The translations under genes and the position numbers were made by a program. Source: Leucoraja ocellata (lineage: Eukaryota). Taken from it: a stretch of 64,000 bases of DNA. The stretch spans positions 3,906,001-3,970,000 of the forward strand of contig JAWMAR010000070.1 of NCBI GenBank assembly GCA_036785375.1, in the 5' to 3' direction. Below, piece after piece: positions 722 to 63,786 of this stretch (position 1 is the stretch's first letter; each line of letters opens with the position of its first letter). The notes beneath the pieces were generated by a model. That model was not told the DNA's origin. It worked only from the letters and a program-made list of their open reading frames with translations, and did no database searches.

Positions 722-1042
722 CGTCAGATACAAGGAGTTCTACGGTAAACATTGGGAGGCCGTTAGATGTTGCAATTCCACATCTGTACCACCCTGTATC
801 GCCAGAGAGAAGATCCTCCACAGTCACAGTAAATATTCCTCGTGCCCGGTTATCTGTGATTGACACTCTTCCACTCCTTCCGTGTTGCCCAATTGTTTCC
901 ACCATATCTGTACATTGGCGATTCTGCACACGGCACCAGTATTTTGTGTGTGAGCGGTACTCTGCTGCATAGTGACAATCGATTGTAAACACACTTCCCA
1001 CAACTGCTCTTACATACGGCTCTCCCCACACTGCACCTGAAA
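722..1042 (-). CDS. Gene A exon V2: CD300/pIgR-type Ig V domain
   Basis: 321-bp open phase-1/1 exon, CCTTCAG acceptor, G|GTACGT donor; IDCHY..KYWC-x6-C..GRVSITD..DTGWYRC. Confidence 0.92.
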
Positions 1043-1645
1043 CTGAAGGGGAGAAACTTTCAGATGGAGAGCAAATGAACAGTTTAGTGGAAATAGATAC
1101 ATTTTCAAGATTCCATGAAAGAAAACTTAAATAGTTCCATGATGTGTCATATTGCTTCACGGCCAATGTCTCCGGTCTGAAGTGCAGACAGTGCTGTTAT
1201 TGTACCAGTTGTGTCAGTGTTCTATCCCCGCGTCAGTGCAATTAGGGTTCACTTCCCACTCCAGATCCCTGAGCAGAAACTGGGCTGGGATCGCAGTGCG
1301 GTACTGAGGGAGCGCGGCAGTTTTGCAGGAGCTGCCTTTCAACAATCCCAGGCGGTGCCCGGCCTCTCACCCCACGAAAGACCCTACTTTGCTATTTCAT
1401 TGGCGGTGACAATTTCTTCACAGCAGTTATCAGGCATCTGAATCATCCTACCACGCCCAGAGATCTGTCCTGAACTCCCATCTACCTCTTTGACGACCCT
1501 CGGACCACCCTTGATCGTACTTTGCTGCCTTTACCTTACACTAAACGTTATTTAATATTCATGTATCTATGCACTGTAGGAGAATCGATTGTAATCCTGT
1601 ATTGTCTTTCTGCTGGAGACGTCAATCAATCGCTGCGAAACGTAC

Positions 1646-1966
1646 CGTCAGATACTTCGAGATGAACGTTAAATATTGGATGGTCGGCAGATGTTGTAAT
1701 TCCACATCTGTACCATCCTGTATCTCCATCCTGAAGATCGTCCACAGTCACAGTAAATATTCCTCGTGCCGGGTTATCTGTGATTGACACTCTTCCATTC
1801 CGTCCGTGTTGCTCATTTGTTTCCACCAAAACTGTACATTGGAGACTCCTCCCACGGCACCAGTATTTTGTGTGTGAGCGGTACTCTGCTGCATAGTAAC
1901 AATCGATTGTGGTCGCTCTTCCCACAACTCCTCTTACATCCCACTTTGCCCACAGTGCACCTGAAA
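1646..1966 (-). CDS. Gene A exon V1: CD300/pIgR-type Ig V domain
   Basis: 321-bp open phase-1/1 exon, CCCTCAG acceptor, GTACGT donor; ALWAKWDVRGVVGRATTIDCYY..KYWCRGRSLQC..DTGWYRC. Confidence 0.92.
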
Positions 1967-2033
1967 CTGAGGGGAGAAACTTTCAGCTGGAGAGAAAATG
2001 AACTGTTTAATGGAAATAGATACATTTTGAAGA

Positions 2034-2602
2034 TTACTTCTTCATATAAACTACTTCATCGCCCCCAATGCATTCAGAACTCTGCAGCCCGGATCATCAC
2101 CCGCACCAGATCATCGGACCACATCACACCCATCCTCACTCAGCTCCACTGGCTCCCTGTGCACCACCGGATTAACTACAAGAATTTACTGCTGACCTTC
2201 AAAGCCCTACACCACCTTGCTCCCCAATATCTCTCTGACCTGCTGCCACCATACACTCCTTCCCGGTCACTTCGTTCCTCCTCATCTGCAATTTTAACTG
2301 ACCCCACATTTAGACTCAGCACAATGGTTGCCAGAGCCTTTGGCTGCTCTGCCCCACGTCTCTGGAACACTCTCCCACCTCCCTTCCGTCACCTGGACAC
2401 TATCGATCAATTCAAATCACAACTCAAAACACACCTGTTTAGATTAGCATACCCGACATAACTTCCACCATGTTCACCCTGATTTTAATGACTTAAAATA
2501 TTTTGTGTATTTTTTTGTTTTTTGTTTTTTGGCAACTTAATTTTAATATTGATAATTGTATTGTGATTTTATGTCCTGTAAGGTGTCCAAGGGTGTCGAG
2601 AG
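2034..2602 (+). mobile_element. L2-clade LINE 3' fragment
   Basis: IQNSAARIITRT..HITPILTQLHWLPV..LLLTFKALH.LAPQYLSDLL C-terminal L2 ORF2 motif; same insertion at 20207-20885 and 37806-37910. Confidence 0.88.
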
Positions 2603-2799
2603 NNNNNNNNNNNNNNNNNNNNNNNNNNNNNNNNNNNNNNNNNNNNNNNNNNNNNNNNNNNNNNNNNNNNNNNNNNNNNNNNNNNNNNNNNNNNNNNNNN
2701 NNNNNNNNNNNNNNNNNNNNNNNNNNNNNNNNNNNNNNNNNNNNNNNNNNNNNNNNNNNNNNNNNNNNNNNNNNNNNNNNNNNNNNNNNNNNNNNNNNN
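2603..2799. other. Assembly gap (N run)
   Basis: 197 N; matches the position of the (TTA)n L2 tail in gene B. Confidence 1.
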
Positions 2800-3111
2800 C
2801 GCCCCATGATGTGTCATATTGCTTCACGGCCAATGTCTCCGCTCTGAAGTGCAGGCAGTGCTGTTATTGTACCAGTTGTGTCAGTGTTCTGTCCCCGGTT
2901 CAGTACAATTTGGGTCCAGATCCCTGAGCAGAAACTGGGCTGGGATCGCAGTGCGGTACTGAGGGAGCGCGGCAGTGTTGCAGGAGCTGCCTTTCAACAA
3001 TCCCAGGCGGTGCCCGGCCTCTCACGCCACAGAAAGACCCCACTTTGCTATTTAATTGGCGGTGCCGCCGGCTACGCTGCCAACATTCATCTCTCAACCG
3101 ACACTGGGCAG

Positions 3112-4292: not shown

Positions 4293-4329
4293 CCGGCAGC
4301 GAGGCGATGAGAAGAATGGGAATCCACAT
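4293..4329 (-). CDS. Gene A leader exon (signal peptide MWIPILLIASLP)
   Basis: 37-bp ATG exon ending phase 1 at G|GTGAGT; joins V exon to give MWIPILLIASLPVSGALW; conserved at 22404-22440 and 54978-55014. Confidence 0.88.
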
Positions 4330-4432
4330 TGTTTTATCCACAGTGACAAAAGCAGCACTTTTCTGTCTGTTGCTCAGCTCTGAGCTTTCAGAGACAACCG
4401 CGTCTCTCAAATAGCAATGACTTAGAAGGGAA

Positions 4433-4456
4433 CAGGACGTCAGATCGTGAACCACA
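4433..4456 (-). promoter_or_regulatory. Gene A proximal promoter: RUNX site intact, ETS site mutated
   Basis: AACCACA 4450-4456; CAGGACGT 4433-4440 where genes B and E have CAGGAAGT. Confidence 0.4.
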
Positions 4457-7720: not shown

Positions 7721-8333
7721 TAAAAATTAGTTGCAGATCGGAAATGAAATCTGCAGATGTTGGATGTGCTTAGCGCGTCAGTCAGCGTCTGTGCAGAGAA
7801 AAATAAGGCTAATAGTCAGAACAATGCCGTTGCATAATTTGGGTCTGATGGGATAGCATAGTCTGAAAGATTAATTGAATGCCTTCCCAAATCGCCTTTA
7901 ATGTATGGCAACAAGAGGAATATCCAGCAGTCTAATCAAAACAAATTAGACAAACCGTTTATTGACAACAACCATTTATTAAGAAGCATTCTGTTGCATT
8001 ATTATTCATTAATCTGTGAAAAAAAATCTAGGAAATTGTATGCATATAATATAGTTTAACAGAGGATAAAACTCTGAAGCAGCAGAAACCACGCAAAGGT
8101 TAAAACAGTAGTTCGAAGCTGACGAAAGAAACCTTGGAAGAGGTGGCAAAAATTAAGATGGTGCAAGCTAGGAGTCTTCATTGTAATTGGTGGGTCGAGT
8201 GGCGAGGTTCTGTGTCATCGCGTCTCTGCAAAAGACAATGTGAAGTCATCAGACAGACTGACAGTGGGAACCACGCTTTATTTGTCCCGGCCACTCCCAA
8301 CACATTGCTGTCTGCAAGATGCTAACCCACGAA

Positions 8334-8869: not shown

Positions 8870-8960
8870 CTTAGAGCCTCTTGTGAACACCGCGGTTGAG
8901 ATACTCCAGATCACAAGCAGGAGAAAGAACATCCAGCGCCCCATTTCCCATGAGATGTAA
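8870..8960 (-). CDS. Gene B transmembrane exon with Arg (SYISWEMGRWMFFLLLVIWSISTAVFTRGSK)
   Basis: 91-bp exon, polypyrimidine CCCAG acceptor, AAG|GTAGGT donor, phase 2 to 0; conserved at 27204-27294. Confidence 0.85.
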
Positions 8961-10576: not shown

Positions 10577-10625
10577 CTTGCAGAGTAATTGGATGGTATC
10601 GAATTTTCACAATAACATTCAAGAC
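10577..10625 (-). CDS. Gene B stalk exon (GLECYCENSIPSNYSA)
   Basis: 49-bp exon, CCAACAG acceptor, AAG|GTAAAA donor; phase 1 to 2 exactly bridges the C2 and TM exons; conserved at 29330-29378. Confidence 0.8.
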
Positions 10626-11849: not shown

Positions 11850-12170
11850 CAGTGCCGTTGATTTTCACCAGGAAACTACAGGGCGCGTCACTGCTGGAGA
11901 TGGACACGTTGACCATTTCACTGGATTTTGATCCATGTTGATTTGAGGCGGTGCAATAATATTGATGGTGCTGGTGTTTGAAGGATTGGCAATGTAGATC
12001 CAGGATATTGTTGTCTGAGATCTTTGAATCCCCAGATGGGGTCTTTTCATACCAGGTATAGCTAATGGGAAGGGATCCCCGGACCGACTCACAGGACACT
12101 GTCACTGAGCCCCCGAGACAATAGACATCGGCTGGTGACAGACACCCGAGCACAGGAACAGACACGGGTT
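11850..12170 (-). CDS. Gene B exon C2b: Fc-receptor-like C2-type Ig domain
   Basis: 321-bp open phase-1/1 exon; EPVSVPVL..GGSVTVSCESVRGSLPISYTW..YYCTASN..G|GTAAGT. Confidence 0.9.
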
Positions 12171-14637: not shown

Positions 14638-14955
14638 CTTCAGATACTTGGAGATATACTTTAAATGTTGGTTCGCCAGGTGTAGTAATTCCACATCTGT
14701 ACCATCCTGTATCTCCAGAGTGAAGATCCTCCACAGTCACAGTAAATATTCCTCGTGCCGGGTTATCTGTGATTGACACTGTTCCGTTCTGTCCATGTTT
14801 CCCATTTGTTTCCACTACATGTGTACACTGGCGACTTGTCTCACGGCACCAGTATTTTGTGTGTGAGCGGTACACTGCTGCATAGTGACAATCGATTGTG
14901 ATCGCTCTTCCCACAACCCCTCTTACTTCGCTCTCAGCCCACAGTGCACCTGAAA
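14638..14955 (-). CDS. Gene B exon V4: CD300/pIgR-type Ig V domain
   Basis: 318-bp open phase-1/1 exon; KYWCRETSRQC..ITTPGEPTFKVYLQVSE|GTAGGT. Confidence 0.92.
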
Positions 14956-16153: not shown

Positions 16154-16474
16154 CTGCATTGTTCATTTCTGTCACATAACTGCACGTTCCTGCTCCTTTG
16201 AAGACTTTCACGTTGAGTATTTCACTGGATTTTGTCCCACGATTATTTGAGGCTGTGCAGTAATATTGACGATATTGACCTCCGAGGATTTCACAACTCA
16301 GATCCAGTTGATTGCCAGACACGATCGTTGAAACCCAATGCTCGTTCTTCTCACACCATGTGTAACGGATGGGAAGGGATCCACGGACAGACTCACACGA
16401 CACTGACACTGAGCCTCCGAGACGTGAGGCATTTGCTGGTGACAGATATCTGAGCACAGGAGCAGACATGGGTT
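16154..16474 (-). CDS. Gene B exon C2a: Fc-receptor-like C2-type Ig domain
   Basis: 321-bp open phase-1/1 exon; EPMSAPVL..SCESVRGSLPIRYTW..YYCTASN; CCCACAG acceptor, GTGAGT donor. Confidence 0.9.
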
Positions 16475-17549: not shown

Positions 17550-17870
17550 CGTCAGATATTTGGAGATGTACGTTAAATATTGGACGATCGCCAGATGTTG
17601 TAATTCCACAGCTGTACCATCCTGTATCTCCAGAGTTAAGATCCTCCACAGTCACAGCAAATATTCTTAGTGCCGGTATATCTGTGATTGACACTCTTCC
17701 ACTACGTCCGTGTTGCCCATTTGTTTCCACTAAAACTGTACACGGGTGATTCCTCCCACGGCACCAGTATTTTGTGTATGAGCGGTACTCTGCTGCATAG
17801 TGACAATCGATTGTGATCGCTCTTCCCACAACTCCACTTACATCCCTCTCTGCCCACACTGCATCTGAAA
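17550..17870 (-). CDS. Gene B exon V3: CD300/pIgR-type Ig V domain
   Basis: 321-bp open phase-1/1 exon; KYWCRGRNHPC..ITDIPALRIF..DTGWYSC. Confidence 0.92.
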
Positions 17871-18859: not shown

Positions 18860-18896
18860 TCAGTGGAGACGACAAGTCAATCGCTGCGAAACGTAC

Positions 18897-19217
18897 CGTC
18901 AGATACATGGAGTTCTACGGTAAACATTGGGAGGCCGTTAGATGTTGCAATTCCACATCTGTACCAGCCTGTATCGCCAGAGAGAAGATCCTCCACAGTC
19001 ACAGTAAATATTCCTCGTGCCCGGTTATCTGTGATTGACACTCTTCCACTCCTTCCGCGTAGCCCAATTGTTTCCACCATATCTGTACATTGGCGATTCT
19101 GCACACGGCACCAGTATTTTGTGTGTGTGCGGTACTCTGCTGCATAGTGACAATCGATTGTAATCGCACTTCCCACAACTGCTCTTACATACGGCTCTCC
19201 CCACACTGCACCTGAAA
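18897..19217 (-). CDS. Gene B exon V2: CD300/pIgR-type Ig V domain
   Basis: 321-bp open phase-1/1 exon; KYWCRVQNRQC..IATSNGLPMF. Confidence 0.92.
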
Positions 19218-19819: not shown

Positions 19820-20134
19820 CGTCAGATACTTCGAGATGAACGTTAAATATTGGATGGTCGGCAGATGTTGTAATTCCACATCTGTACCATCCTGTATCTC
19901 CATCCTGAAGATCGTCCACAGTCACAGTAAATATTCCTCGTGCCGGGTTATCTGTGATTGACACTCTTCCATTCCGTCCGTGTTGCTCATTTGTTTCCAC
20001 CAACACTGTACATTGGAGACTCCTCCCACGGCACCAGTATTTTGTGTGTGAGCGGTACTCTGCTGCATAGTAACAATCGATTGTGGTCGCTCTTCCCACA
20101 ACTCCTCTTACATCCCACTTTGCCCACAGTGCAC
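19820..20134 (-). CDS. Gene B exon V1: CD300/pIgR-type Ig V domain (in frame only from the second acceptor)
   Basis: CCCTCAG-TTCAG has lost one T; the distal AG gives 320 bp (frameshift), the proximal AG gives 315 bp (open). Confidence 0.8.
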
Positions 20135-20206
20135 CTGAACTGAGGGGAGAAACTTTCAGCTGGAGAGAAAATGAACTGTTTAATGGAAATAGATACATTT
20201 GAAGAT

Positions 20207-22403: not shown

Positions 22404-22440
22404 CCGGCAGCGAGGAGATGAGAAGAATGGGAATCCACAT
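22404..22440 (-). CDS. Gene B leader exon (MWIPILLISSLP)
   Basis: 37-bp ATG exon, G|GTGAGT donor, phase 1. Confidence 0.88.
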
Positions 22441-22568: not shown

Positions 22569-25357
22569 GCGAGCCAGCAGCAGCTCGACACGATGTAGTG
22601 TGAAAGGCTCAGGGGTATATCTAGCAATGGTTGGGTCAGATGATCACAGAGTCATACGTCACGGAAACAGGCCCTTCTACCCAACTCGTTAGACCAATAT
22701 GCTCATCTAAGTTAGTCAAATTTGCCCACGCTCGACCATATCTCCCCAAACCTTCCCTATCCATGGACCTGGCCAAGTGCCCGTTCCATGTTGTTATTGC
22801 AGCTGCTTCAGCACTTCGTCAAGTGTGATGTATCCGTAAGGATGGAGCGGCGGTTAACTCTGTACTCAGAGTCTGTTAACACTGAACTGTGGTGGAAATA
22901 TTGACAGACAAAAAAATGCAGGAGCAACTCTGCGGGCCCGTCAGCACCTCTGGAGAAAATGGATAGATGACGTTTCGGGTCGGGAACCTTCGTGTAAACA
23001 ATGATACGTGTATAAAATATGACAATTAGAAGAGTAAAAATTAGGTTCCACTGTACTGTTTTTGTACTGTATTAACTTCTAATAAAATAAACAAAAAAGA
23101 AAGAAGAGTAAAAACGTCTAAGATGTGTACACTTCCGGATCATTCCCATTTGATGATTTTGTAAGTGGACCGGCAGACCAAAAACATGGAACTTTTGTTT
23201 TGGCATATTGCTGAAGTGATACACTTAGTGAAGTTAAAGCAAGGTAGAATATGCACGGTGAATTGAATTGTTAACTTGTCTTCTTCACAAGTGCTAATAA
23301 ATTATCAGAGTTGTGGTCATGTACATTCCATTGGTTGATTTTGTACATCTGCTTGCAACGATTTCATTCTGTAGGCAACTAGTTGCATTATAATATGACT
23401 TAATATCTGCTGCGGGCTATCGTTCTGGATGTGTTACTTTCAGGGGAACAGTGCAGTTTATTCGGGTTGTGTCCGTCAGTGGCAGTGTTGTGTATCACGT
23501 GGTATCGGTGTAACACACTGATGTGTTCGCCACTGATGTTAGCTGAGCGCTGGCGACCCTCAGTAAATGATCTTTTGTTGGGAGCTATTTCCTGTTTACT
23601 TGCCCAACTAAAACACTGCAGAGAGGAACCGACGATGCAGCAAAACAATTTAATCTGTCTTTATTCGCCATGACCCATGACTTCTGCAAACACTGCTCAG
23701 CAATCAGTGTTACACCGAGCTGCACGCAAGATGCGGTTCAGAGATACGAATCTACACACCTTGTTTCAGCAGCGCGAGCAAAGTGTCAGCACGGCAGAAC
23801 AATTCAGTGTAAAGGGAGAAATTACTGTTTGATCAAATTAGATTAAAGTACATTGCAAGTCAGCACCACCGCTAAACACAACAGTGGCATCGACCCGCAA
23901 TGTCACCCGTTCTTTCCCTCTAGTGATGCCGCCCTTCCGCGAGTTGCTCCAGTATTTTGTGTATATCTGTGGCATCTCAGACCATTTATCTCTCATTATC
24001 TGAGAGGCACTTTGGGATGTCCTGCAGTGGGGAATGATCCAACTCAAGATCATTCCTCCCATTAGACCATTAACAAGCTCAATTTGAACGGGCCAGGCAG
24101 CATCAATGTGACCACAGAATCTTCAAGTATCTCTGGCTATTCAGCACCCCTCCCTGACCTGGGGTTTGTGAGTTCAAAGCAGTCTCTGGTCTCATTTCCG
24201 TGTCTCTCCGCTTACCGTGTGGAGAATATTTATCTTTGTCAGTGGGACATTTCAGCAATCTTTGAATCTTTCCGGAGTTTATGGCGGTTACTCCGTTATT
24301 GCAGGTCACCATTTTGTATTCGCAAAACAACATCCTTCATAGTTCTTTCATGGGCGGGGCTACAGTCACGAGTTAGACTAAGGAAAGCAACACAATGTAT
24401 TTTGCAGTTTCACACCCCGCGCTTTGCAAGCTGCAACTCAACCATTTTGTTCTGCACAAGAATAGACGTTCCACTAGTTTAGTTTGGTTTAGTTTAGCTT
24501 AGTTGGAGATACAGCGAAGAAAACGGCCCTTCGGCCCACCGAGTCCACACTGACCAGGAAATCCCCGCACATTAACACTACCCCACACACACTGGGACGT
24601 TTACAATTATAACATGCCAATTGGTGGGGGGGGGGGGGGGGGGTTGTGTGAGTGGGAATGCAAGGGTTACTTGAAGTTAGCAGAAGTCAACGTTCACACC
24701 GCTGGGTATAACCAGCCCAAGCGAAATATGAGGTGCAGTTCTCAAATTGTGCGGCAACTTAATCTGACAATGGAGGATGCCCAGGGACAGTAATGTCAGT
24801 GTGGGAATGGAGGGGAGGAGTTACCGTGGCTAGCGACCGGGTTACAGGTAGGGCGGACTCACGGAGTTGTTCAGCGAAACGATCGCAGTCTAATCAAAAC
24901 AAATTAGACAAACCGTTTATTGACAACAACCATTTATTAAGAAGCATTCTGTTGCATTATTATTCATTAATCTGTGAAACAAAATCCAGGAAATTGTATG
25001 CATATAATATAGGTTTAACAGGAGTATAAAACTCTGAAGCAGCAGAAACCACGTAAAGGTTAAAACAATAGTTCGAAGCTGACGAAGTAAACTTGGAAGA
25101 GGTGGCAAAAATTAAGATGTGCAAGCTAGGAGTCTTCATTGTAATTCGTGGGTCGAGTGGCGAGGTTCTGTGTCATCGCGTCCTCTGCAAAAGACAAATG
25201 TGAAGTCAAATGTGAAGACTCTCTGACAGTGGGAACCACGCTTTATTTGACCCGACCACTCCCAACACATTGCTGTCTGCAAGATGCTAATCCAAGAATT
25301 AGCTAATCCACTGCCAACGAACCACCACCGGGCACAGAAATCCACCCTGCACGCGTA

Positions 25358-27203: not shown

Positions 27204-27294
27204 CTTTGAGCCTCTTGCGAACACCGCGGTTGAGATACTCCAGATCACAAGCAGGAGAAAGAACATCCAGCGCCCCACTTTCCATGAGATGTAA
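27204..27294 (-). CDS. Gene C transmembrane exon with Arg (SYISWKVGRWMFFLLLVIWSISTAVFARGSK)
   Basis: Intact 91-bp exon, CCCAG acceptor, GTAGGG donor. Confidence 0.8.
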
Positions 27295-29329: not shown

Positions 29330-29378
29330 CTTGCAGAGTAATTGGATGTTATCGAATTTTCACAAGAATATCCATGAC
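29330..29378 (-). CDS. Gene C stalk exon (GHGYSCENSITSNYSA)
   Basis: Intact 49-bp exon, phase 1 to 2. Confidence 0.78.
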
Positions 29379-35220: not shown

Positions 35221-36016
35221 AGTCTGTCGGGTTATTAGTTTGAGTCGGAATGCAAACCTCTGACAGGGTGACATTTCATGACCAGTTCAGAGGCAGGGAA
35301 ATGTGTTTGAGCATCCCACTTGAAGTGGGTGGCCGCTCAGTGGAACAGAAGCCCGCACTGGGTGAGAGCAACATGAGTGGGGGTTTCCCGACCCCCGCCC
35401 GTTCCCCGCAGGTCTCTGCACTGCTGCGGAGCCTCGGGATATCGGTGGCTGCCCTGACCCTTCCCGGAGGAGAACATAGATAAGGCATTTTCAGTGGAGA
35501 CGTCAAGGTCAATCGCTGCGAAACGTACCGTCAGATACTTGGAGATGTACGTTAAATATTGGACGGTCGCCAGGTGTAGTAATTCCACATCTGTACCATC
35601 CTGTATCCTCCAGAGTGAAGATCCTCCACAGTCACAGCAAATATTCTTAGTGCCGGTATATCTGTGATTGACACTCTTCCACTCCGTCCGTTTTGGCCAT
35701 TTTGTTTCCACTGAATCTGTACATGGGGCGATTCCTCCCACGGCACCAGTATTTTTGTGCGTGAGCGGTACTCTGCTGCATAGTGACAATCGATTGTGAT
35801 CGCTCTTCCCACAACCCCTCCTTACTTCCCTCCTCTGCCCACACTGCATCTGAAACTGAGGGGAGAAACTTTCAGATGGACCACAGATCAAACAACACTT
35901 GTTCCCTCACTGGGATTATTAGTTTGAGTCTGAATGCAAATTTCTGACGGGTGACATTTCATACAGTTCAGAGGAAGGGCAATGCGCTGAGTATTCCACT
36001 TGAAGTGAAAAGTGAA

Positions 36017-36439: not shown

Positions 36440-37910
36440 CAGTGGAGACGACAAAGTCAATCGCTGCCGAAACGTACCGTCAGATACATGGAGTTCTACG
36501 GTAAACATTGGGAAGGCCGTTAGATGTTGTAATTCCACATCTGTACCAGCCTGTATCGCCAGAGAGAAGATCCTCCACAGTCCACAGTAAATATTCCTCG
36601 TACCCGGTTATCTGTGATTGAAACTCTGCCTCTCCTTCCGTGTTGCCCAATTGTTTCCACCATATCTGTACATTGGCGATTCTGCACACGGCACCAGTAT
36701 TTTGTGTGTGAGCGGTACTCTGCTGCATAGTGACAATCGATTGTAAACGCACATTCCTACAACTGCTCTTACATACGGTTCTCCCCACACTGCACCTGAA
36801 ACTGAAGGGGAGAAACTTTCAGAAGGAGAGCAAATGAACAGTTTAGTGGAAATAGATACCTTTTCAAGATTCCATGAAAGAAAACTTAAATAGTTCCATG
36901 ATGTGTCATATTGCTTCACGGCCAATGTCTCCTGCCTGAAGTGCAGGCAGTGCTGTTATTGTAACCATTGTGTCAGTGTTCTGTCCCCGGGTCAGTACAA
37001 TTAGGGTTCACTTCCCACTCCAGATCCCTGAGCAGAAACTGGGCTTGGGGATCGCAGTGCGGTACTGAGGGAGCGCGGCAGTGTTGCAGGAGCTGCCTTT
37101 CAACAATCCCAGGCGGTGCCCGGCCTCTCACCCCACAGAAAGACCCCACTTTGCTATTTCATTGGGCGGTGACAATTTCTTCACAGCAGTTATCAGGCAT
37201 CTGAATCATCCTACCACGCCCAGAGATCTGTCCCTGAACTCCCATCTACCTCTTTGACGACCCTCGGACCACCCTTGATCGGACTTTGCTGCCTTTACCT
37301 TACACTAAACGTGATTTATTTTTCATGTATCTATGGCACTGTAGGATAATCGATTGTAATCCCTGTATTGTCTTTTCTGCTGGAGACGTCAATCAATCGC
37401 TGCGAAACGTACCGTCAGATACTCCGAGATGAACGTTAATATTGGATGGTCGGCAGATGTTGTAATTCCACATCTGTACCAATCCTGTATCTCCATCCTG
37501 AAGATCGTCCCACAGTCACAGTAAATATTCCTCGTGCCGGGTTATCTGTGATTGACACTCTTTCCACTCCGTCCGTGTTGCTCATTTGTTTCCACCAAAA
37601 CTGTACATTGGAGACTCATCCCAACGGCACCAGTATTTTGTGTGTGAGCGGTACTCTGCTGCATAGTAACAATCGATTGTGGTCGCTGTTCCCACAACTC
37701 CTCTTACATCCCACTTTGCCCACACTGCACCTGAAACTGAGGGGGAGAAACTTTCAGATGGAGAGCAATGAACTGTTTAATGGAAATAGGATACATTTTG
37801 AAGATTACTTCGTCATATAAACGACTTCATCGCCTCCAATGCATTCAGAACTCTGCAGCCCGGATCATCACCCGCACCAGATCATCGGACCACATCACAC
37901 CCATCCTCAC

Positions 37911-38338: not shown

Positions 38339-38648
38339 AACCTGTGTCTGTTCCTGTGCTTGGATTTCTGTCATCAGCCAATGTCTCCTGTGTCGGAGGC
38401 TCAGTGACAGTGTCCTGTAGGTCTGAGCGGGGATCTCTTCCCATTAGCTACAACTGGTATGAAAATACCTTAAAGATCTCAAATAACAACAACCTGGGAT
38501 CTACGTTGTCAATACTTCAAACAACAAAGCCATCAATATTACTGCAAAGCCTCAAATAATCGTGGGACAGAGTCCAGTGAAATGGTTACTGTGGCAGTGT
38601 CCAACACCGGAGAGAATTGCAGTTATGTGGTGCATTTCGGTAAGAATG
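38339..38648 (+). CDS. Gene D C2-type Ig exon (one extra G at 38496-38498)
   Basis: CCCACAG acceptor; EPVSVPVL..SCRSERGSLPISYNW, then after removing one G LDLRCQ..YYCKASNNRG..NCSY; 310 bp vs 309 bp in frame; G|GTAAGT donor. Confidence 0.82.
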
Positions 38649-39275: not shown

Positions 39276-40589
39276 GTGCTAACATTCTACCTCCAGCCAC
39301 GCAAGTTTACTTTAGAGATACAGGATAGAAACAGGCCATTCGGCCCATCGGGATAGTGCCAACCAACAACCAGCCGCACACCAGTTCCATCATACACCCT
39401 AAGGACAATTAACAGAAGCTAATTAACCTACAAACCTGCACATATTTGGAATGTGGGAAGAAACAAGTGCACCCGGAGAAAACCTACGCGATCACTTGGA
39501 GAACGCATAAACTGCATACAGACAGCACATGTACACATGATCGAAGCCGGGTCTCTGGCGATGTAAGGCAGCAACTTACCTCTGCGCCACCGTGCCGCCC
39601 TCAAAATATAATTCCCATTAGGACATTTCAATATTCTTTGCCAATCGATCAGTTGTCTTGTTACTATGGCAGCTCAGAAAGCCAGATACGAGTGGGCGGG
39701 AGCCAGTGACAGTGGACAATTGCTTAATCTGCGCATGCAATGTTTCTCTATCCATTATTTTTATAGTGATTATGGCGATCGAGTGATATAGTTGATAGTG
39801 ATGTTAATATACTTCATCCAATATGCCCCGGTGTCATGGAGAAATATAGTGTGGAAATAAGCCCTTCAGCCCAACTTGCCGACGCCTATTATCCACACCA
39901 GTCCCACCTCCCTGTGTTTGGCGCAAAACGTTCTACACCTATCCTATCCATGTATCTATCCAGATGTATTTAAACGTCGTGATCGTACTTGCCTCAACTA
40001 TCTCCTTTGGCAGATCTTTCTATACACCGACCACCATTTGGGCAGAAAAGGTGCCCCCCCCCCCACCCCCCCCAGGATCCTACTAACCCCCCTCCCCCCT
40101 CCCCCGATCTTAAACCTGTCATCTGGATCACTATTGAAGCTTGGGTCACGTTTCTAGTATAAGCAAGGCTAGCTCCCTGGTTGGAAATTTCCCTTGTGCT
40201 AGCACACGAGTAGACATGCTTTGCAGTGCCACCAATCTAAACAATTTCACCGTCCCAGCGGCATGTCTGCGTCCCCGCTACAGAGGGATAGGAATAAAGC
40301 AGAAATGATCAGTGAATGCGGGCGACACTCATATTTGGAAACCTCTCTCGTTTGATGCAAAAGACGGCCAATTACACTGAGGAAAAATCTCCTTATACCC
40401 GCAATGAATCAGCCCTTCCCCCAGGTAAAGATTTCCCATCTGCCAAATATGCTCGCTGGCGTGATTGTCCGGGAAGATCAAGTGAAAGTGAATTTTATTT
40501 TTTGTCTTAACAGACAATGCATATTCTTGTGCAACATCCACAACAGAAAAAATGACAAGTGCATCTTCTGCATTTTCAAATGTATCCAG

Positions 40590-40631
40590 CGACCGCCAAG
40601 AGGAAAACAGTGAAGTCCATTACCCAGAAAG
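40590..40631 (+). CDS. Gene D putative stalk exon 2 (DRQEENSEVHYPER)
   Basis: 42-bp open phase-2/2 exon, ATCCAG acceptor, AAG|GTACAG donor; matches the phase-2 start of the TM exon. Confidence 0.5.
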
Positions 40632-41743: not shown

Positions 41744-41835
41744 ACTTATTTTGATAATTGTTCTCAGTGGCACCGGGGTTCTGCTCGTTGTGGTCTTCGC
41801 TTTCCTACTATTGTATCTAAGGAATAGACACAGGG
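41744..41835 (+). CDS. Gene D uncharged transmembrane exon (RLILIIVLSGTGVLLVVVFAFLLLYLRNRHR)
   Basis: Long polypyrimidine tract plus CAG, 92 bp, G|GTGAGA donor; hydrophobic span followed by a basic stop-transfer cluster. Confidence 0.88.
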
Positions 41836-43676: not shown

Positions 43677-43723
43677 AATCCAAGTGCAACACACAACGCA
43701 GAGACAGGGCAAATGGAACCCAG
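43677..43723 (+). CDS. Gene D cytoplasmic exon 1 (ESKCNTQRRDRANGTQ)
   Basis: TTGCAG acceptor, CAG|GTAAGG donor; 47 bp, phase 1 to 0, links the TM and terminal exons in frame. Confidence 0.8.
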
Positions 43724-45950: not shown

Positions 45951-46268
45951 GAAATACCAACACGGCGAGAAAGAGCTGCTCGTGTGAACCTGCAGCATTC
46001 CCGAGACGACGAGGCAGCTGACCAGTTGGCCAACAATGACAGCGGGATCATGTATGCAGCCGTGCAGTTTCAAAGGCGATCGAGGATGGGACAGTCCGTT
46101 ACCAACAAAGACGACGTCATCTCACAAGGAAAGCATTCTGTCACCAGTGAGGACAATGTCACCTATGCAAATGTTAACTTACCAAGCCGTACCCGAAAGG
46201 GCAATGTCAGGTCCCCTGGCAACCTGCAAGATTCTGCACAGCCAATTTATGCCAGCGTTGTTTCTTAG
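45951..46268 (+). CDS. Gene D terminal exon with ITIMs (IMYAAV, VTYANV, C-terminal PIYASV)
   Basis: TTTCTGTTAG acceptor, phase 0, open to TAG; two (I/V)xYxxV consensus ITIMs and a third YxxV motif. Confidence 0.88.
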   Translation, partial: EIPTRRERAARVNLQHSRDDEAADQLANNDSGIMYAAVQFQRRSRMGQSVTNKDDVISQGKHSVTSEDNVTYANVNLPSRTRKGNVRSPGNLQDSAQPIYASVVS

Positions 46269-54977: not shown

Positions 54978-55014
54978 ATGTGGATTCCCATTCTTCTCAT
55001 CGCCTCGCTACCCG
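54978..55014 (+). CDS. Gene E leader exon (MWIPILLIASLP)
   Basis: 37-bp ATG exon, G|GTGAGT donor. Confidence 0.88.
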
Positions 55015-56580: not shown

Positions 56581-56901
56581 TTTCAGGTGCAGTGTGGGCA
56601 AAGAGGGAGGTAAGAGGAGTTGTGGGAAGAGCGATCACAATCGATTGTCACTATGCAGCAGAGTACCGCTCACACACAAAATACTGGTGCCGTGGGAGGA
56701 GTCTCCAATGCACAGTGTTGGTGGAAACAAATGAGCAACACGAACGGAATGGAAGAGTGTCAATCACAGATAACCCGGCACGAGGAATATTTACTGTGAC
56801 TGTGGACGATCTTCAGGATGGAGATACAGGATGGTACAGATGTGGAATTACAGCATCTGCCGACCATCCAATATTTAACGTTTATCTCGAAGTATCTGAC
56901 G
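56581..56901 (+). CDS. Gene E exon V1: CD300/pIgR-type Ig V domain
   Basis: 321-bp open phase-1/1 exon; KYWCRGRSLQC..ITASADHPIF. Confidence 0.92.
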
Positions 56902-58570: not shown

Positions 58571-58680
58571 CTTATCTTTTGATCTGCTTTATTGTAACCC
58601 GTCCGTCCTCTGTCCTCAGTCAGGGCGTTGTAAAGGCGGTGAATGTCTAAACACGGGTCCGGCCCAGTGTCGGTTGAGAG
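58571..58680 (+). repeat. 110-bp direct repeat, left copy
   Basis: Matches 59955-60064 with 4 mismatches. Confidence 0.92.
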
Positions 58681-59044: not shown

Positions 59045-59365
59045 AACCCGTGTCTGTTCCTGTGCTTGGGTTTCTGTCACCAGCCAATGTCTCTTGTCTC
59101 GGGGGCTCAGTGACAGTGTCCTGTGAGTCGGTCTGGGGATCCCTTCCCATTAACTACAGCTGGTATGAAAAGACCCCATCTGGGGATTCAAAGATCTCAG
59201 ACAACAATGCCCTGGATCTACATTGTCAATCCTTCAAACACCAGCACCATCAATATTATTGCACAGCCTCAAATCAACATGGATCAAAATCCAGTGAAAT
59301 GGTCAACATGTCCATCTTCAGCAGTGACGTGCCCTGCAGTTTCCTGGTGAAAATCAACGGCACTG
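59045..59365 (+). CDS. Gene E inserted C2b-type Ig exon
   Basis: 321-bp open phase-1/1 exon closely similar to 11850-12170 and 30616-30941. Confidence 0.9.
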
Positions 59366-60064: not shown

Positions 60065-60460
60065 AAGAATGTTGGCAGCGCAGCCGGCGGCACCGCCAAT
60101 TAAATAGCAAAGTGGGTCTTTCTGTGGGGTGAGAGGCCGGGCACCGCCTGGGATTGTTGAAAGGCAGCTCCTGCAACACAGCCGCGCTCCCTCAGTACCG
60201 AATTGCGATTCCAGCCCAGTTTCTGCTCTGGGATCTGGAGTGGGAAGTGAACCCAAATTGTACTGACCCGGGGACAGAACACTGACACAACTGGTACAAT
60301 AACAGCACCGCCTGCACTTCAGACCGGAGACATTGGGCGTGAAGCAATATGACACATCATGGAACGTTTATGTTTTCTTTCATGTGATCTTCGAAATGTA
60401 TCTATTTCCATTTTACAGTTCATTTGCTCTCCATCTAAAAGTTTTTCCCCTCCATTTCAG

Positions 60461-60775
60461 TTGCAGTTTGGGGGAAGAAGAATGTAACAGGAGATGTGGG
60501 AAGAGCGATCACAATCGATTGTCACTATGCAACAGAGTACAGCTCACACACAAAATACTAGTGCCGTGGGTGGAGTCGCCAATGTACAGATATGGTGGAA
60601 ACTAATGGGCAACACGGACGGAGTGGAAGAGTATCAATCACAGATATACCGGCACTAAGAATATTTACTGTGACTGTGGAGGATCTTCACTCTGGAGATA
60701 CAGGAAGATACATCTGTGGAATTAGAACATCTGCCGCCCATCCAATGTTTTCCCTACATCTCCAAGTATCTGACG
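60461..60775 (+). pseudogene. Gene E V3-position exon with nonsense codon at the invariant Trp
   Basis: KY-TAG-C at 60559-60561 (TGG in all other V exons); distal acceptor CTCAG changed to CTCCA; 315 bp otherwise in frame. Confidence 0.88.
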
Positions 60776-61929
60776 GTACGTTTCGTAGCGATGGACTTGA
60801 CGTCTCCACTGAAATGCTTGATCCATGTTTTCTCCGGGAAGGGTCAGGGCAACACCGATATCCCGAGGCTCCGCAGCAGTGCAGAGACCTGCGGGGAGCG
60901 GGCGGGGGTCGGGAAACCCCACTCATGTTGCTCTCACCCGGTGCGGGCTCTGTCCCACTGAGCGGCCACCCACTTCAAGTGGGATGCTCAGCACATTTCC
61001 CTGCGTCTGAACTGTATGAAATGTCACCCTGTCAGAGGTTTGCATTCCCGCTCAAACTAATAACCCGAGAGATCAGTGAGAGACAAGTGTTGCTCACGGT
61101 CTGAATACCCGGAGAATAATAAACAGGGAATCCGGCCCCAGAGCTCAACAGACTGCGTTCAGTCCACCCGGGGCAGGTCAGCCCCCTGGTCCGACGCTGC
61201 CTGGACAGGACGTGATTGACGCAGGGAGCGATTGGACAAACTCAGACTTCATTCCTTGGTGTGGAAATGATTGAGCGAGGAGCCTATAGAAATGTATCAA
61301 TCACGAGAAGCATGCTCATTTTCCCACGATGTGTGGAATCAAAAAGTGGAGGACGGACGCAATGGGAACTATTTAAAGAGGGGTGGGGGGGGGGGGGGGG
61401 GGGTAGTAAGCTGTCACTTACTGTAATGGCATGTTTTGTACAGGTGAGTGGCCGAAGCTGAACACAATTCGCCCAAGTTCCACCTCAACAACATATGTAC
61501 AACTGAAACATAACATCCCAACTTCTGTTCTGATGGACAACATTGTCCACACATTGGGTGATATTTATATGGAACCTGCTGCCAGAGGAAGTTGTTGAGG
61601 CAGTTAGAAGAACAGCATTTAAAATATTTCTTTGATATTTGCGTAGATTGGGATCATTGCGAGTGATAAGGGAGAAACGTGGACATATGGCTATGGACTA
61701 GAAAGACATGTTGGTCGGCATGAATGAGCTGTTGTGATGGGCATCTTTCGGTTCTCTATAACTCTAACCTTCTTCGGTTTCTGGGCTTCGCACACTCACA
61801 GAGATGTAGATGAGCCGGTGAGATATCAACCGGACGGTTCGGGCTGAGATAAAGGGCTGATGAGATTTAGCATGTGTTTGGTTTTTAACTTTTCATACAG
61901 GTGACTGAATGTTTGCTCCATTCCCACAG

Positions 61930-62250
61930 AACCCGTGTCTGCTCCTGTGCTCAGATATCTGTCACCAGCAAATGCCTCACGTCTAGGAGGCTCAGTGTCA
62001 GTGTCGTGTGAGTCTGTCCGTGGATCCCTTCCCATCCGTTACACATGGTTTGAGAAGAACGAGCATTGGGTTTCAACTACCGTGTATGGCAATCAACTGG
62101 ATCTGAGTTGTGAAATCCTCGCCGGCCAACACCGTCAATATTACTGCACAGCCTCAAATAATCATGGGACAAAATCCAGTGAAAGTCTCAACGTGAAAGT
62201 CTTCAAAGGAGCAGGAACGTGCAGTTATGTGACAGAAATCAACAATGCAG
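61930..62250 (+). CDS. Gene E exon C2a: Fc-receptor-like C2-type Ig domain
   Basis: 321-bp open phase-1/1 exon, paralogue of 16154-16474. Confidence 0.9.
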
Positions 62251-63468
62251 GTGAGTGTTCTGATCTATTCGCCTTGAGGTGATGTTCATGGATTTCTTGT
62301 TATTTGCAGACGGCATCATTGCAGCTCGTGGTGTAAATGTGAGAGTTTGTTTGGGGGACTGGCAATTAATTGGCTGTTGCTTCCACCTGGGATGTGTTGA
62401 GCAATTTTAGCAAAGGAGAGACAAACGTGCACGTATCACAACGTGTTTAGTGCATTCCATCAAATTTCGGCCTTCCAACTTAAAAATATTATTTCTGGCT
62501 GCCACTTAAGGTCTCATACTCACTTTGAGTCGGAGAACGCACCAAATTCATTCTGTTTGGATCCGCCATCATTTCCAATGAAGGGTGTACAATTTCATGA
62601 TTATGTTCATGATTTTAACTGGTAATTTGTGTCAAATTCCAGTAATCTCACAAAATTAAAGTGGAATCTACTTGGCCGTCACTCGATCAAGTATAACCCT
62701 TAATTTTGTTAAAGAGAATTTTGAAAAGAACTTCCCAGTAGGTGTGGAGACGTTCAGATTGGAAGTCCAGAATAGAGTGTAAATCAGAGTGACCAAGTTT
62801 ATACAAGGCCAGTTCTTCTTAAAATATTTCAGTGTCATTCACCCTTGAGTCTTTATTACAAGATGTAATTCCCCCTCAACTAAATGTTCTTATGTTTTTT
62901 TGGTTATTATCATCTTATTTTCCCTTATGCATAATTTCATATATAATTAATTATGTCTCATGAGCAAAAAACATAAATTAACTAATTCACCCCAAAATAA
63001 TTTCATTCACCCTTGGGTGAACCATTCACTAGTTTAAGAAGCACTGGCCTCGGCTACAATTTCGCTGAACACTTGTGCTTGGTCTGTCATGATCCAGAAT
63101 CGCACTTGATAGACACCCCATCCTCAACCGCTGATGCAGAGCAGCAGCAGTTTGCACCATCTGCACGATGCACTGCAGCAACCCACCAAGACTCCCTAGA
63201 CAGCGCCTTCCAATTGCAACAGGCTCAGCGTTCAATGCATCATTATTCACCATTCACACCCACATTGGCTGGGAAGCGTTTGGAACGACCTGTGCAGATG
63301 GTGAGGGACAGTGTATAGTATATGTCTCTCATCGCAATCTAGGTGGAATTCAACAGAGTTAAGAAAATCATTGCGCGGACTCCCCTGTACACATTGACGC
63401 ATACTATAATGTATATGTTTGTGAAAGGCTAATTTTTCTCTTCAATTTATGAAAGATGATTCCTTCAG

Positions 63469-63786
63469 TTTCAGGTGCACTGCGGGCAGAGAGCGAAGTA
63501 CACGGGGTTGTGGGAAGAGCGATCACAATCGATTGTCACTATGCAGCAGTGTACCGCTCACACACAAAATACTGGTGCAACGGGACAAGTCGCCAGTGTA
63601 CACATGCAGTGGAAACAAATGGGGAACATGGACAGAGTGGAAGAGTGTCAATGTCAGATAACCCGGCACGAGGAATATTTACTGTGACTGTGGAGGATCT
63701 TAACTCTGGAGATACAGGATGGTACAGCTGTGGAATTACTACACCTGGCGAACCAACATTTAAAGTATATCTCCAAGTATCTGAAG
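63469..63786 (+). CDS. Gene E exon V4: CD300/pIgR-type Ig V domain
   Basis: 318-bp open phase-1/1 exon; KYWCNGTSRQC..ITTPGEPTF; gene continues past the window end. Confidence 0.92.

What the first reader, a model, noticed from the sequence alone, without database searches (positions are those of the whole stretch)
722..63786. Paired activating/inhibitory receptor cluster built from swappable CD300/pIgR-type V and FcR-like C2 modules
Seen: at least five genes share one leader type and a kit of 318-321-bp phase-1/1 exons, but end either in an Arg-bearing TM with a short tail (B, C) or in a neutral TM with an ITIM tail (D). Domain orders differ: B is V-V-V-C2-V-C2, E is V-C2-(V)-C2-V-... Established: the WC-x-C second disulfide marks CD300/TREM/pIgR V domains; C-x5-GSLPI-x-Y-x-W marks FcR/FCRL-type C2 domains; mammalian CD300/pIgR proteins are V-only; skate MDIRs are modular activating/inhibitory relatives. 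Inference: this is a rapidly remodelling elasmobranch paired-receptor system whose diversity comes from germline domain shuffling, possibly binding Ig or lipids. How much of this architecture is already described needs a database check.
Basis: partly seen in the sequence, partly recalled or inferred. Interest (0 to 1): 0.88.

Follow-up and report, generated by a model that had tools for sequence, protein, structure and literature searches.

The report
Skate MDIR immune receptor gene cluster
This stretch of a skate genome holds a tandem cluster of immune receptor genes built from two kinds of immunoglobulin-domain exons, and it belongs to a family (MDIR) already described from another skate, so it is a real but largely known feature.

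Summary
The exons are real. The window holds five gene units (A-E) built from 318-321-nt phase-1/1 exons of two kinds. The V exons resemble pIgR D1 and CD300. The C2 exons resemble FCRL5 domains 4-9.

B and C end in an Arg-flanked transmembrane (TM) exon and a 15-residue tail. D ends in a neutral TM and a tail with two canonical ITIMs.

Corrections:
- Only 3 leader exons exist, not 5.
- C and D meet head to head at the gap 37911-38110, and both lack a 5' end.
- The many frameshifts in C, and the one in D, are single-base homopolymer insertions confined to about 27-38.5 kb. They are probably assembly errors.

This is not a new system. The exons are 74-90% identical (the short B/C tail exons 62-67%) to the named clearnose-skate proteins MDIR2, MDIR3 and MDIR5. 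They are 87-100% identical to Leucoraja erinacea RefSeq models. Mixed V+C2 models occur across sharks, rays and chimaera.

RNA reads from a related species were too sparse to show splicing. First-stage notes report the same family in neighbouring windows of this genome (unchecked).

What remains of interest: two papers state that cartilaginous fish lack PIGR/FCRL homologues, and one TM exon is read in two frames.

The parts
4293..4329 (-). Gene A leader exon (12 codons plus 1 nt, phase 1)
   Evidence: ATG, hydrophobic leader, GT donor. Exact 24-nt leader pattern, one of 3 in the window.
1646..1966 (-). Gene A V1 exon, 321 nt, intact
   Evidence: Pfam V-set E 1.7e-12.
722..1042 (-). Gene A V2 exon, 321 nt, intact. 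The gene then runs off the window.
   Evidence: Pfam V-set E 1.3e-10.
22404..22440 (-). Gene B leader exon
19820..20139 (-). Gene B V1 exon, 320 nt as assembled. It has one T fewer at the acceptor than A, C and E. The frame is kept only if the next AG, 5 nt on, is used (315 nt).
18897..19217 (-). Gene B V2 exon, 321 nt, intact
17550..17870 (-). Gene B V3 exon, 321 nt, intact
16154..16474 (-). Gene B C2a exon, 321 nt, intact
   Evidence: 82.6% identical to MDIR5.
14638..14955 (-). Gene B V4 exon, 318 nt, intact
   Evidence: 88.3% identical to MDIR3.
11850..12170 (-). Gene B C2b exon, 321 nt, intact
   Evidence: 84-85% identical to MDIR5/MDIR3.
10577..10625 (-). Gene B stalk exon, 49 nt, phase 1 to 2
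8870..8960 (-). Gene B TM exon, 91 nt. Arg is at residue 9 of the 31-residue exon product, followed by 18 uncharged residues.
   Evidence: 87% identical to MDIR5.
8178..8225 (-). Gene B last coding exon: 15 residues and a stop, no tyrosine
37413..37736 (-). Gene C V1 exon, with 4 single-base insertions and 1 deletion relative to A's V1
36478..36801 (-). Gene C V2 exon, 3 single-base insertions
35529..35855 (-). Gene C V3 exon, 6 single-base insertions
33716..34012 (-). Gene C C2a exon (first 294 reference positions), with a 1-nt and a 2-nt insertion
32139..32460 (-). Gene C V4 exon, insertions of 1, 2 and 1 nt
30643..30941 (-). Gene C C2b exon (first 294 reference positions), with a 4-nt and a 1-nt insertion
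29330..29378 (-). Gene C stalk exon, 49 nt, intact
27204..27294 (-). Gene C Arg-TM exon, 91 nt, intact
   Evidence: 90% identical to MDIR5.
25136..25184 (-). Gene C last coding exon, 49 nt. One extra G relative to B puts it out of frame.
38339..38648 (+). Gene D C2 exon, 310 nt. It has an in-frame 12-nt shortening, as MDIR2 has, plus one extra G in a G run that shifts the frame.
40514..40631 (+). Gene D stalk exon, 118 nt
   Evidence: 94% identical to L. erinacea LOC129708882.
41744..41835 (+). Gene D TM exon, 92 nt, with no charge inside the hydrophobic span
43677..43723 (+). Gene D cytoplasmic exon, 47 nt
   Evidence: 100% identical to LOC129708882 over 16 residues.
45951..46268 (+). Gene D tail exon: 105 residues and a stop, with two canonical ITIMs and a third YxxV
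   Evidence: 99% identical to LOC129708882 and 82.6% to MDIR2.
54978..55014 (+). Gene E leader exon
56581..56901 (+). Gene E V1 exon, intact
59045..59365 (+). Gene E C2b exon, intact. It lies inside a 1.27-kb cassette (58688-59958) that is 94-96.5% identical to B's C2b block.
58571..58680 (+). 110-nt direct repeat, left copy, flanking E's C2b cassette. The right copy is at 59955-60064 (96% identical).
60455..60775 (+). Gene E third Ig exon (V), 321 nt, with TAG at 60559-60561 in place of the conserved Trp
61930..62250 (+). Gene E C2a exon, intact
63469..63786 (+). Gene E V4 exon, intact. The gene then runs off the window.

Best explanation
The window is part of a tandemly duplicated locus of MDIR (modular domain immune-type receptor) genes in a skate close to Leucoraja erinacea.

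Each gene has a 37-nt leader exon. A variable string of symmetrical phase-1/1 Ig exons follows. Several subtypes are CD300/pIgR-type V domains with the extra C-C' disulfide. Two subtypes are FCRL5-type C2 domains. Each gene then ends in one of two terminal modules.

One module is a 49-nt stalk exon, a TM exon with Arg at its outer boundary, and a 15-residue tail without tyrosine (B, C; MDIR5 type). By inference this pairs with an ITAM adaptor, or otherwise needs a partner to signal.

The other module is a longer stalk, a neutral TM and a tail with two ITIMs (D; MDIR2 type). By inference this recruits SH2 phosphatases.

Shown: the exon anatomy, the homologies, a duplication unit of about 18.16 kb, and one cassette insertion.

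Inferred: cell-surface expression on leukocytes, opposing signals, the ligand, and diversification by block duplication made harmless by the symmetrical exon phase.
For: Exon anatomy with AG/GT sites and phases.

V exon:
- Pfam V-set E 1.3e-10 to 2.3e-13 for 4 of 4 V exons tested.
- PDB matches to pIgR (2.4e-49 for the whole chain, best single domain 1.9e-12), CD300 family chains (2.4e-18 to 3e-17), NKp44 and TREM2. Both extra cysteines align with pIgR D1.

C2 exons:
- FCRL5 4.2e-44 and 5.3e-41 for the whole chain, best domains 7.3e-10 and 3.3e-07.

Named MDIR2, MDIR3 and MDIR5 of Rostroraja eglanteria were found with E 2e-74 to 5.8e-227. All three have mixed V and C2 domains and the same two terminal modules. 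Per-exon identity to the window is 74-90%, with the short B/C tail exons at 62-67%.

The domain trees group the window's V4, C2a and C2b exons with the MDIR domains of the same type. Support is 100/98 for V4 and 100/100 for C2a. The C2b group is weaker, 85/80 and drawn open.

L. erinacea models match E's five exons in order at 94-98% and D's exons at 87-100%.

133 of 275 fetched relatives with a domain hit mix V and C2. 31 of 245 carry the same Arg-TM motif.

Duplication structure.
Against: - No transcript evidence from this species. Of four runs laid on 8820-14819, the two RNA runs (a species about 5% divergent) gave depth 0-2.6 on B's C2b and V4 exons. No splice joint was among the 15 joints listed (723 more were not shown).
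- As assembled, C, D and E's third exon are broken, and B's V1 is 1 nt short.
- C and D have no 5' end.
- The Arg lies at the membrane boundary, not mid-helix. As I recall, the MDIR authors did not count MDIR5 as having an activating motif. I could not read that paper.
- The MDIR literature itself could not be opened, so 'already described' rests on database names and sequences, on two passages in PMC3031540, and on my recollection of the abstract.
Confidence: 0.85

Rival explanations
1. The cluster is mostly a graveyard. Gene C (all six Ig exons and the tail exon broken), gene D (C2 exon frameshifted, no 5' end) and E's third exon are true pseudogenes. On this view the window shows birth-and-death decay rather than a working paired system.
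For: Frameshifts or stops in 7 of 9 gene C exons, in D's C2 exon and in E's third Ig exon. No leader for C or D.
Against: The breaks in C are almost all single-base insertions next to an identical base. In three-way alignments there are 57 unique to that copy (53 in homopolymer context) over about 5.2 kb, against 0-2 in the other copies. Its unique substitutions are not clearly in excess.

Pairwise, there are 98 against 15 such insertions between 27,151 and 37,910, but 17 against 24 between 18,308 and 25,357.

Decay usually favours deletions. This pattern, next to an assembly gap, looks like unpolished long-read sequence. E's TAG is a substitution and may be real.
Confidence: 0.2
2. These genes are the cartilaginous-fish orthologues of pIgR or of Fc receptor-like genes, and they work as immunoglobulin transport or Fc receptors.
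For: RefSeq names the relatives 'polymeric immunoglobulin receptor-like' and 'Fc receptor-like protein 5'. The best PDB matches are pIgR and FCRL5.
Against: Per single domain the V exon is nearer to CD300 chains (about 1e-18) than to isolated pIgR D1 chains (3e-12 to 3e-14). pIgR and CD300 are V-only and FCRL is C2-only, whereas these genes mix both. The tails are ITIM or very short. No pIgR-type cytoplasmic tail was seen, although no PDB chain covers that tail. The genes are multi-copy. The names are automatic. No binding data exist.
Confidence: 0.12
3. Part of the apparent tandem array is an assembly artefact: haplotypes or collapsed and expanded repeats placed in tandem around the gap at 37911-38110. 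The true locus would then have fewer genes.
For: There is a gap with broken collinearity and an error-rich stretch beside it. The third copy (35,893-37,910) is 95-96% identical to the other two.
Against: Copies 1 and 2 diverge from 97% down to 82% along the unit, with different TE content. That is unlike haplotypes. The plus-strand genes D and E have distinct module orders. First-stage notes (unchecked) report more copies in neighbouring windows.
Confidence: 0.1

Closest known systems
MDIR2, MDIR3 and MDIR5 of the clearnose skate (Rostroraja/Raja eglanteria; UniRef names seen; paper Cannon et al. 2006, Immunogenetics 58:362, not readable here)
   Same: - Same leader.
- Same V and C2 domain types: V4 83-88%, C2a 78-83%, C2b 84-85% identity.
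- Same Arg-TM module (87-90%) with a short tail (62-67%, MDIR5).
- Same neutral-TM/ITIM tail (MDIR2: TM 74%, tail 83%).
- Variable domain number and order.
   Different: - Different species.
- Gene B's predicted V-V-V-C2-V-C2 with Arg-TM is not among MDIR2/3/5, nor among the 275 fetched proteins with a domain hit. The nearest are VVCVC and VVVC.
- MDIR1 and MDIR4 were not retrieved, so they could not be compared.
- The genomic layout is seen here: an 18-kb tandem unit and a head-to-head junction.
Leucoraja erinacea RefSeq models: 'Fc receptor-like protein 5' (1078 aa), LOC129708882 (413 aa, XP accession not retrieved), and XP_055511094
   Same: - E's five exons match the first five domains of the 1078-aa model, in the same order, at 94-98%.
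- D's C2, stalk, TM, cytoplasmic and tail exons match LOC129708882 at 87-100%.
   Different: - Not identical, so this is a close species, another haplotype or a paralogue.
- In those models the exons that are broken in the window are intact.
Mammalian and teleost pIgR; the CD300/CMRF35 family; NKp44; TREM2
   Same: V-set fold with the extra C-C' disulfide and the KYWC-type motif. CD300 also comes as ITIM and charged-TM forms (established knowledge, recalled).
   Different: Those proteins have V domains only: one in CD300/TREM/NKp44 and two to five in pIgR. None of the V-only relatives fetched here carries the FCRL-type C2 domain (138 of 275 are V-only).
Human FCRL5 (PDB 9loc), domains 4-9
   Same: The C2 exons align over the whole domain, including the motif around the first cysteine. 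Best-domain E-values are 7.3e-10 and 3.3e-07.
   Different: FCRL proteins have no CD300-type V domains. Classical Fc-gamma/epsilon receptors, KIR and LILR did not appear among the listed matches for the C2 queries. The one KIR row (9lrh_H, E 0.22) is an scFv fusion.
Carp SITR and zebrafish MDIR-like/CD300-like genes (PMC3031540, passages read)
   Same: That paper describes the CD300-like V domain as homologous to skate MDIRs. [quoted passage not shown]
   Different: SITR is a soluble two-domain protein. It was not compared by sequence here.

Membership tests
MDIR (modular domain immune-type receptors) | Sequence homology to the named MDIR proteins | tested here: met
   74-90% identity per exon to MDIR2/3/5 (short B/C tail exons 62-67%); the window's V4 and C2a exons fall in starred clades with MDIR domains of the same type.
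MDIR (modular domain immune-type receptors) | Ectodomain built from a variable number and order of two classes of Ig domain (CD300-like V/I type and C2 type) | tested here: met
   B is VVVCVC and E is VC(V)CV. MDIR2 is VC, MDIR5 is VCVC and MDIR3 is VVCVC.
MDIR (modular domain immune-type receptors) | Members with ITIM tails alongside members with other TM/tail types | tested here: met
   D has two canonical ITIMs. B and C have the MDIR5-type Arg-flanked TM and a short tail.
MDIR (modular domain immune-type receptors) | Large multigene family | tested here: met
   five gene units in 64 kb on an 18.16-kb tandem unit; unchecked notes report more copies nearby.
MDIR (modular domain immune-type receptors) | Expressed as spliced mRNA in immune tissues | tested here: inconclusive
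   the RNA runs (related species) gave depth 0-2.6 on B's exons. No splice joint was among the 15 listed (723 more were not shown). The MDIR database entries have no contig on record. This fits a cDNA origin, but that is my inference.
pIgR | V-type domains with the extra C-C' disulfide, homologous to pIgR D1 | tested here: met
   5 domains of 7jg2_E matched, best i-Evalue 1.9e-12. Both cysteines aligned.
pIgR | Ectodomain of V domains only, and a single-copy gene | tested here: not met
   C2 exons are interleaved, and there are five gene units in the window.
pIgR | Binds polymeric Ig and is transcytosed | not testable with these tools
   No binding or localisation data.
CD300/CMRF35 | CD300-type V domain | tested here: met
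   CLM-6, CD300A and CLM-1 chains at E 2.4e-18 to 3e-17.
CD300/CMRF35 | Single V domain followed by stalk and TM | tested here: not met
   genes whose exon run is seen whole have several Ig exons (B and C six each). D shows only one because its 5' end is missing.
FCRL | FCRL-type C2 domains | tested here: met
   FCRL5 is the top hit, with six matched stretches.
FCRL | Ectodomain of FcR-type Ig domains only, without V-set domains | tested here: not met
   four of B's six Ig exons are V-set.
Paired activating/inhibitory receptors (in the KIR/LILR/CD300 sense) | Near-identical ectodomains on opposite signalling modules | tested here: inconclusive
   Within the window, B/C and D share only the C2b type, at 78% DNA identity. 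The MDIR3-type ITIM partner of the B/E-type ectodomain was not found in the window. A and E leave the window before their 3' ends.
Paired activating/inhibitory receptors (in the KIR/LILR/CD300 sense) | Charged residue within the TM that binds an ITAM adaptor | not testable with these tools
   Arg at residue 9 of the TM exon product bounds an 18-residue uncharged span. Adaptor binding needs experiment.

The most novel reading that the evidence does not exclude
MDIR-type receptors could be the functional stand-ins for poly-Ig and Fc receptors in cartilaginous fish. On this reading their pIgR/CD300-type V domains or FCRL-type C2 domains bind IgM or IgW. Two papers (one from 2014, one from 2026) say these fishes lack PIGR, FCRL and classical FcR homologues, and this would fill that gap.

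A linked possibility is a membrane/secreted switch. If the 49-nt stalk exon is skipped, the Arg-TM exon is read in a second frame as a conserved 16-residue secretory end.
Probability: 0.15. Interest if true: 0.75.

Novelty: new member of a known kind. Interest (0 to 1): 0.3.

Why it matters
As an annotation, it places MDIR genes on a genome and shows how they are laid out. There is an 18-kb tandem unit, one leader type, symmetrical 318-321-nt exons, and two alternative terminal modules. One C2 cassette has been copied between genes together with 110-nt flanking repeats.

It also bears on a statement that is still repeated. PMC4016189 (2014, passages read) and PMC13337447 (2026, passages read) say that no PIGR, FcRL or classical Fc receptor homologues exist in cartilaginous fish. 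The 2026 review asks how these fish then manage opsonic phagocytosis and Ig transport.

The domains here match pIgR/CD300 and FCRL5 well above chance. Mixed V+C2 models exist in skates, rays, sharks and chimaera. The building blocks of both families therefore predate bony fish, and MDIRs are obvious candidates to test for Ig binding.

None of this is a new kind of system.

Tried and rejected
- In one search, one of my five window-derived queries (the 11845 C2) was cut in the wrong frame. Its hits were self-matches in that frame. The C2b map was redone in frame.
- My first C2 exon ends (294 nt) were wrong. MDIR5 and the RefSeq models showed that the exons run to the next phase-1 donor (321 nt).
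- RNA test. The one read-laying run (8820-14819; two RNA and two DNA runs; 90% likeness) was swamped by repeats at 8820-8848, 9220-9419, 10820-11019 and 11620-11819. It gave only 0-2.6x on B's exons, and no splice joint was among the 15 joints listed (723 more were not shown). It neither supports nor refutes splicing. No run holds half or more of the stretch's words (best share 0.37), so the window's own individual was probably not among them. I therefore could not test the suspected assembly errors with reads.
- Literature. The MDIR paper (pmid 16738934, PMC3701310) and a review (PMC2823954) are not held. Four searches for MDIR terms and one more found only PMC3031540 using the name. 'Already in print' therefore rests on that paper's passages and reference list, on database names, and on my recollection of the 2006 abstract. 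Supplements were not consulted.
- MDIR1 and MDIR4 did not appear in two homologue searches that together covered 221-1223 aa. I ran no further search on them.
- I considered a dN/dS argument for diversifying V domains. In one search, dN/dS is above 1 in 5 of 5 informative V pairs and 0.53-0.64 in 2 of 2 C2 pairs. The counts are 7-47 differences per pair, so this is only a hint.
- I considered the reading that C is a true pseudogene and gave it low weight.
All searches used single exons or public proteins.
- No structure prediction was run, because the sequence matches to solved structures were already clear.

Full report
**What is in the sequence**

A six-frame scan and a tblastn of window-derived domain queries found two recurring kinds of Ig exon.

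The first kind is a V-type exon of 321 nt (318 nt in one subtype). The second is a C2-type exon of 321 nt. Every intact copy has an AG acceptor and a GT donor in phase 1/1.

Pfam scored 4 of 4 V exons tested as V-set (E 1.3e-10 to 2.3e-13). It scored the two C2 types as Ig_3/Ig_2 and Ig_C17orf99 (1.6e-06 and 5.2e-07). The ITIM tail matched no family.

Against solved structures, the V exon matched:
- pIgR at 2.4e-49 for the whole chain, with five domains matched and the best at 1.9e-12;
- CD300-family chains at 2.4e-18 to 3e-17;
- NKp44, TREM2 and the Fc-mu receptor.

Both cysteines of the extra C-C' disulfide aligned to pIgR D1.

The two C2 exons matched FCRL5 first, at 5.3e-41 and 4.2e-44 for the whole chain (best domains 3.3e-07 and 7.3e-10). 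FCRL4, CD22 and VSIG4 followed far behind. No classical Fc receptor, KIR or LILR chain was among the listed matches; the one KIR row is an scFv fusion at E 0.22.

**Gene map**

A self-comparison shows a tandem unit of about 18.16 kb: 147-18307, 18308-35893, and the start of a third copy at 35894-37910. Identity falls from 97% to 82% along the unit. Inverted copies of its parts lie on the plus strand beyond 38 kb.

Public relatives served as guides for mapping. I searched exon by exon and never joined exons. The units are:

| Unit | Strand | Content |
|---|---|---|
| A | minus | leader, V1, V2, then off the window |
| B | minus | leader, V1, V2, V3, C2a, V4, C2b, 49-nt stalk exon, 91-nt TM exon, 15-residue tail |
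| C | minus | the same nine exons as B after the leader; no leader |
| D | plus | C2, 118-nt stalk, neutral TM, 47-nt exon, 105-residue tail |
| E | plus | leader, V1, C2b, a V exon with a TAG stop, C2a, V4, then off the window |

D's tail has two canonical ITIMs and a third YxxV.

The leader pattern occurs 3 times, with 0 in each of 100 shuffles. 'Five genes with one leader' is therefore not borne out.

**Gaps**

- The first gap (2603-2799) sits in A's first intron. Its flanks are collinear with the sister copy, at a place where that copy has a 133-nt simple repeat.
- The second gap (37911-38110) is where minus-strand C and plus-strand D meet head to head, and where homology to the other copies stops. 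C's leader, and D's leader and V exon, are absent. Continuity across this gap is not supported.
- The third gap (46747-47058) lies 479 nt past D's stop codon.

I filled no N.

**Are C and D pseudogenes?**

Each of C's six Ig exons carries two to six small insertions (C's V1 also one single-base deletion). C's tail exon carries one extra G, and D's C2 exon carries one extra G in a G run.

In three-way alignments, the stretch 31.9-37.9 kb has 57 single-base insertions unique to it. Of these, 53 lie next to an identical base. The other copies have 0-2. Its unique substitutions are not clearly in excess.

Pairwise, the counts are 98 against 15 between 27,151 and 37,910, but 17 against 24 between 18,308 and 25,357.

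An insertion-only, homopolymer-bound excess confined to the flank of a gap looks like unpolished long-read sequence, not decay. I put about 75% on that reading. I could not test it with reads.

Two other defects differ in kind. E's TAG is a substitution of the conserved Trp codon and may be real. B's V1 lacks one T at its acceptor, and the frame survives only if the next AG is used.

**What it is**

A HMMER search of a V exon against 1.84 billion representatives gave 2474 proteins at E of 0.001 or better, and 119 at 1e-30 or better. The best were RefSeq models from skates, rays and a shark. They are named 'polymeric immunoglobulin receptor-like', 'CMRF35-like molecule 5' or 'uncharacterized'.

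Searching with an Amblyraja model then returned proteins named 'Modular domain immune-type receptor' 3, 5 and 2 of Rostroraja eglanteria, at E 5.8e-227, 3.1e-162 and 2e-74. Their sequences and domain parsing are:

| Protein | Domain order | End |
|---|---|---|
| MDIR2 | V-C2 | neutral TM and ITIM tail |
| MDIR3 | V-V-C2-V-C2 | neutral TM and ITIM tail |
| MDIR5 | V-C2-V-C2 | the same stalk, Arg-TM and short tail as B and C |

Exon-by-exon identities to the window:

| Window exon | Identity to MDIR |
|---|---|
| V4 | 88% (MDIR3) |
| C2a | 83% (MDIR5) |
| C2b | 84-85% |
| Arg-TM exon | 87-90% |
| B/C tail exon | 62-67% (MDIR5) |
| D's TM | 74% (MDIR2) |
| D's tail | 83% (MDIR2) |

In the domain trees, the window's V4 and C2a exons fall in starred clades with MDIR domains of the same type (100/98 and 100/100). 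The C2b exons group with the MDIR C2b domains more weakly.

The window genes are therefore MDIR genes.

The nearest species is Leucoraja erinacea. LOC129708882 matches D's exons at 87-100%. A 1078-aa 'Fc receptor-like protein 5' model matches E's five exons, in the same order, at 94-98%.

Among 277 fetched proteins:
- 275 have a domain hit;
- 133 mix V and C2, in about 45 combinations of order and tail, including sharks and a chimaera;
- none has B's exact VVVCVC with Arg-TM.

Among the 245 proteins held:
- 31 carry the Arg-TM motif;
- 12 carry an ITIM tail by a strict pattern.

**How it probably works**

Shown: modular genes whose symmetrical exons let Ig domains be added, lost or moved without breaking the frame.

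Also shown: one such move. E's C2b block (58688-59958) is 94-96.5% identical to B's and is bracketed by 110-nt direct repeats.

Inferred:
- The products are type I membrane receptors of leukocytes.
- D-type tails recruit SH2 phosphatases.
- B/C-type receptors, which have no tyrosine, signal through a partner bound at the Arg.

The Arg bounds an 18-residue uncharged span rather than sitting mid-helix. 'Activating' is therefore likely but unproven.

V exons show dN/dS above 1 in 5 of 5 informative pairs. C2 exons show 0.53-0.64 in 2 of 2 pairs. This hints that the V domains face the ligand, but the counts are small.

**Novelty**

The family, its mixed domains and its ITIM and other forms are known. 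The evidence is the database entries, the passages in PMC3031540, and my recollection of the abstract of Cannon et al. 2006. That paper could not be opened.

RefSeq already models close relatives. What this window adds is the locus layout and a predicted six-domain member.

One point of wider interest remains. PMC4016189 and PMC13337447 (passages read) state that cartilaginous fish lack PIGR, FcRL and classical Fc receptor homologues. The data here show both domain types at clear significance.

First-stage notes list the same family in neighbouring windows of this genome. They are unchecked, except for the 110-nt repeat, which I confirmed.

Noticed in passing
window 8870-8960 and 27204-27294 (TM exons), with stalk exons 10577-10625 and 29330-29378: If the 49-nt stalk exon is skipped, the Arg-TM exon is read in another frame as a 16-residue end followed by a stop. 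That same end is the C-terminus of 3 of 245 fetched RefSeq models (Amblyraja, and Leucoraja twice). B and C differ at 2 nt in this stretch. Both changes are silent in the alternative frame and change the residue in the TM frame. This may be a membrane/secreted switch.
   Followed up: partly
window about 27,150-38,650: There is an excess of single-base homopolymer insertions relative to the paralogous copies: 98 against 15 pairwise, and 57 unique in three-way alignments. The stretch lies beside the gap 37911-38110. It is probably low-quality assembly, so any frameshift called here is suspect.
   Followed up: yes
window 58149-58292, minus strand: A stalk-like exon lies on the opposite strand inside plus-strand gene E. 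It is 62.5% identical over 48 residues (E 2.4e-13) to the stalk that precedes the neutral TM and ITIM tail in a Rhinoraja model. It is probably a relic of an inverted inhibitory gene.
   Followed up: no
window 58571-58680 and 59955-60064: 110-nt direct repeats (96% identical) bracket E's C2b cassette. Related sequence occurs in the leader-to-V1 introns of A, B and E. This is a footprint of the duplication that moved the C2 exon.
   Followed up: partly
window 60559-60561: TAG replaces the conserved Trp codon in E's third Ig exon. The L. erinacea model has Trp there. The exon is symmetrical, so skipping it would keep the frame.
   Followed up: partly
window 20135-20145: B's V1 acceptor region has TT where A, C and E have TTT. 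This is either a homopolymer miscall or a shift to the next AG, which would remove two residues.
   Followed up: partly
window 350-748, 18621-18923, 25692-25994, 44198-45013: Reverse-transcriptase-like ORF fragments of retroelements are interspersed in the cluster and are partly included in the duplicated unit. In one search, high read depth at 8820-8848, 9220-9419, 10820-11019 and 11620-11819 marks dispersed repeats.
   Followed up: no
literature: PMC4016189 (2014) and PMC13337447 (2026) state that cartilaginous fish lack PIGR, FcRL and classical FcR homologues (passages). RefSeq names dozens of elasmobranch models 'pIgR-like' or 'FCRL5-like', and the 2006 MDIR work is not cited in the passages I saw.
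   Followed up: partly
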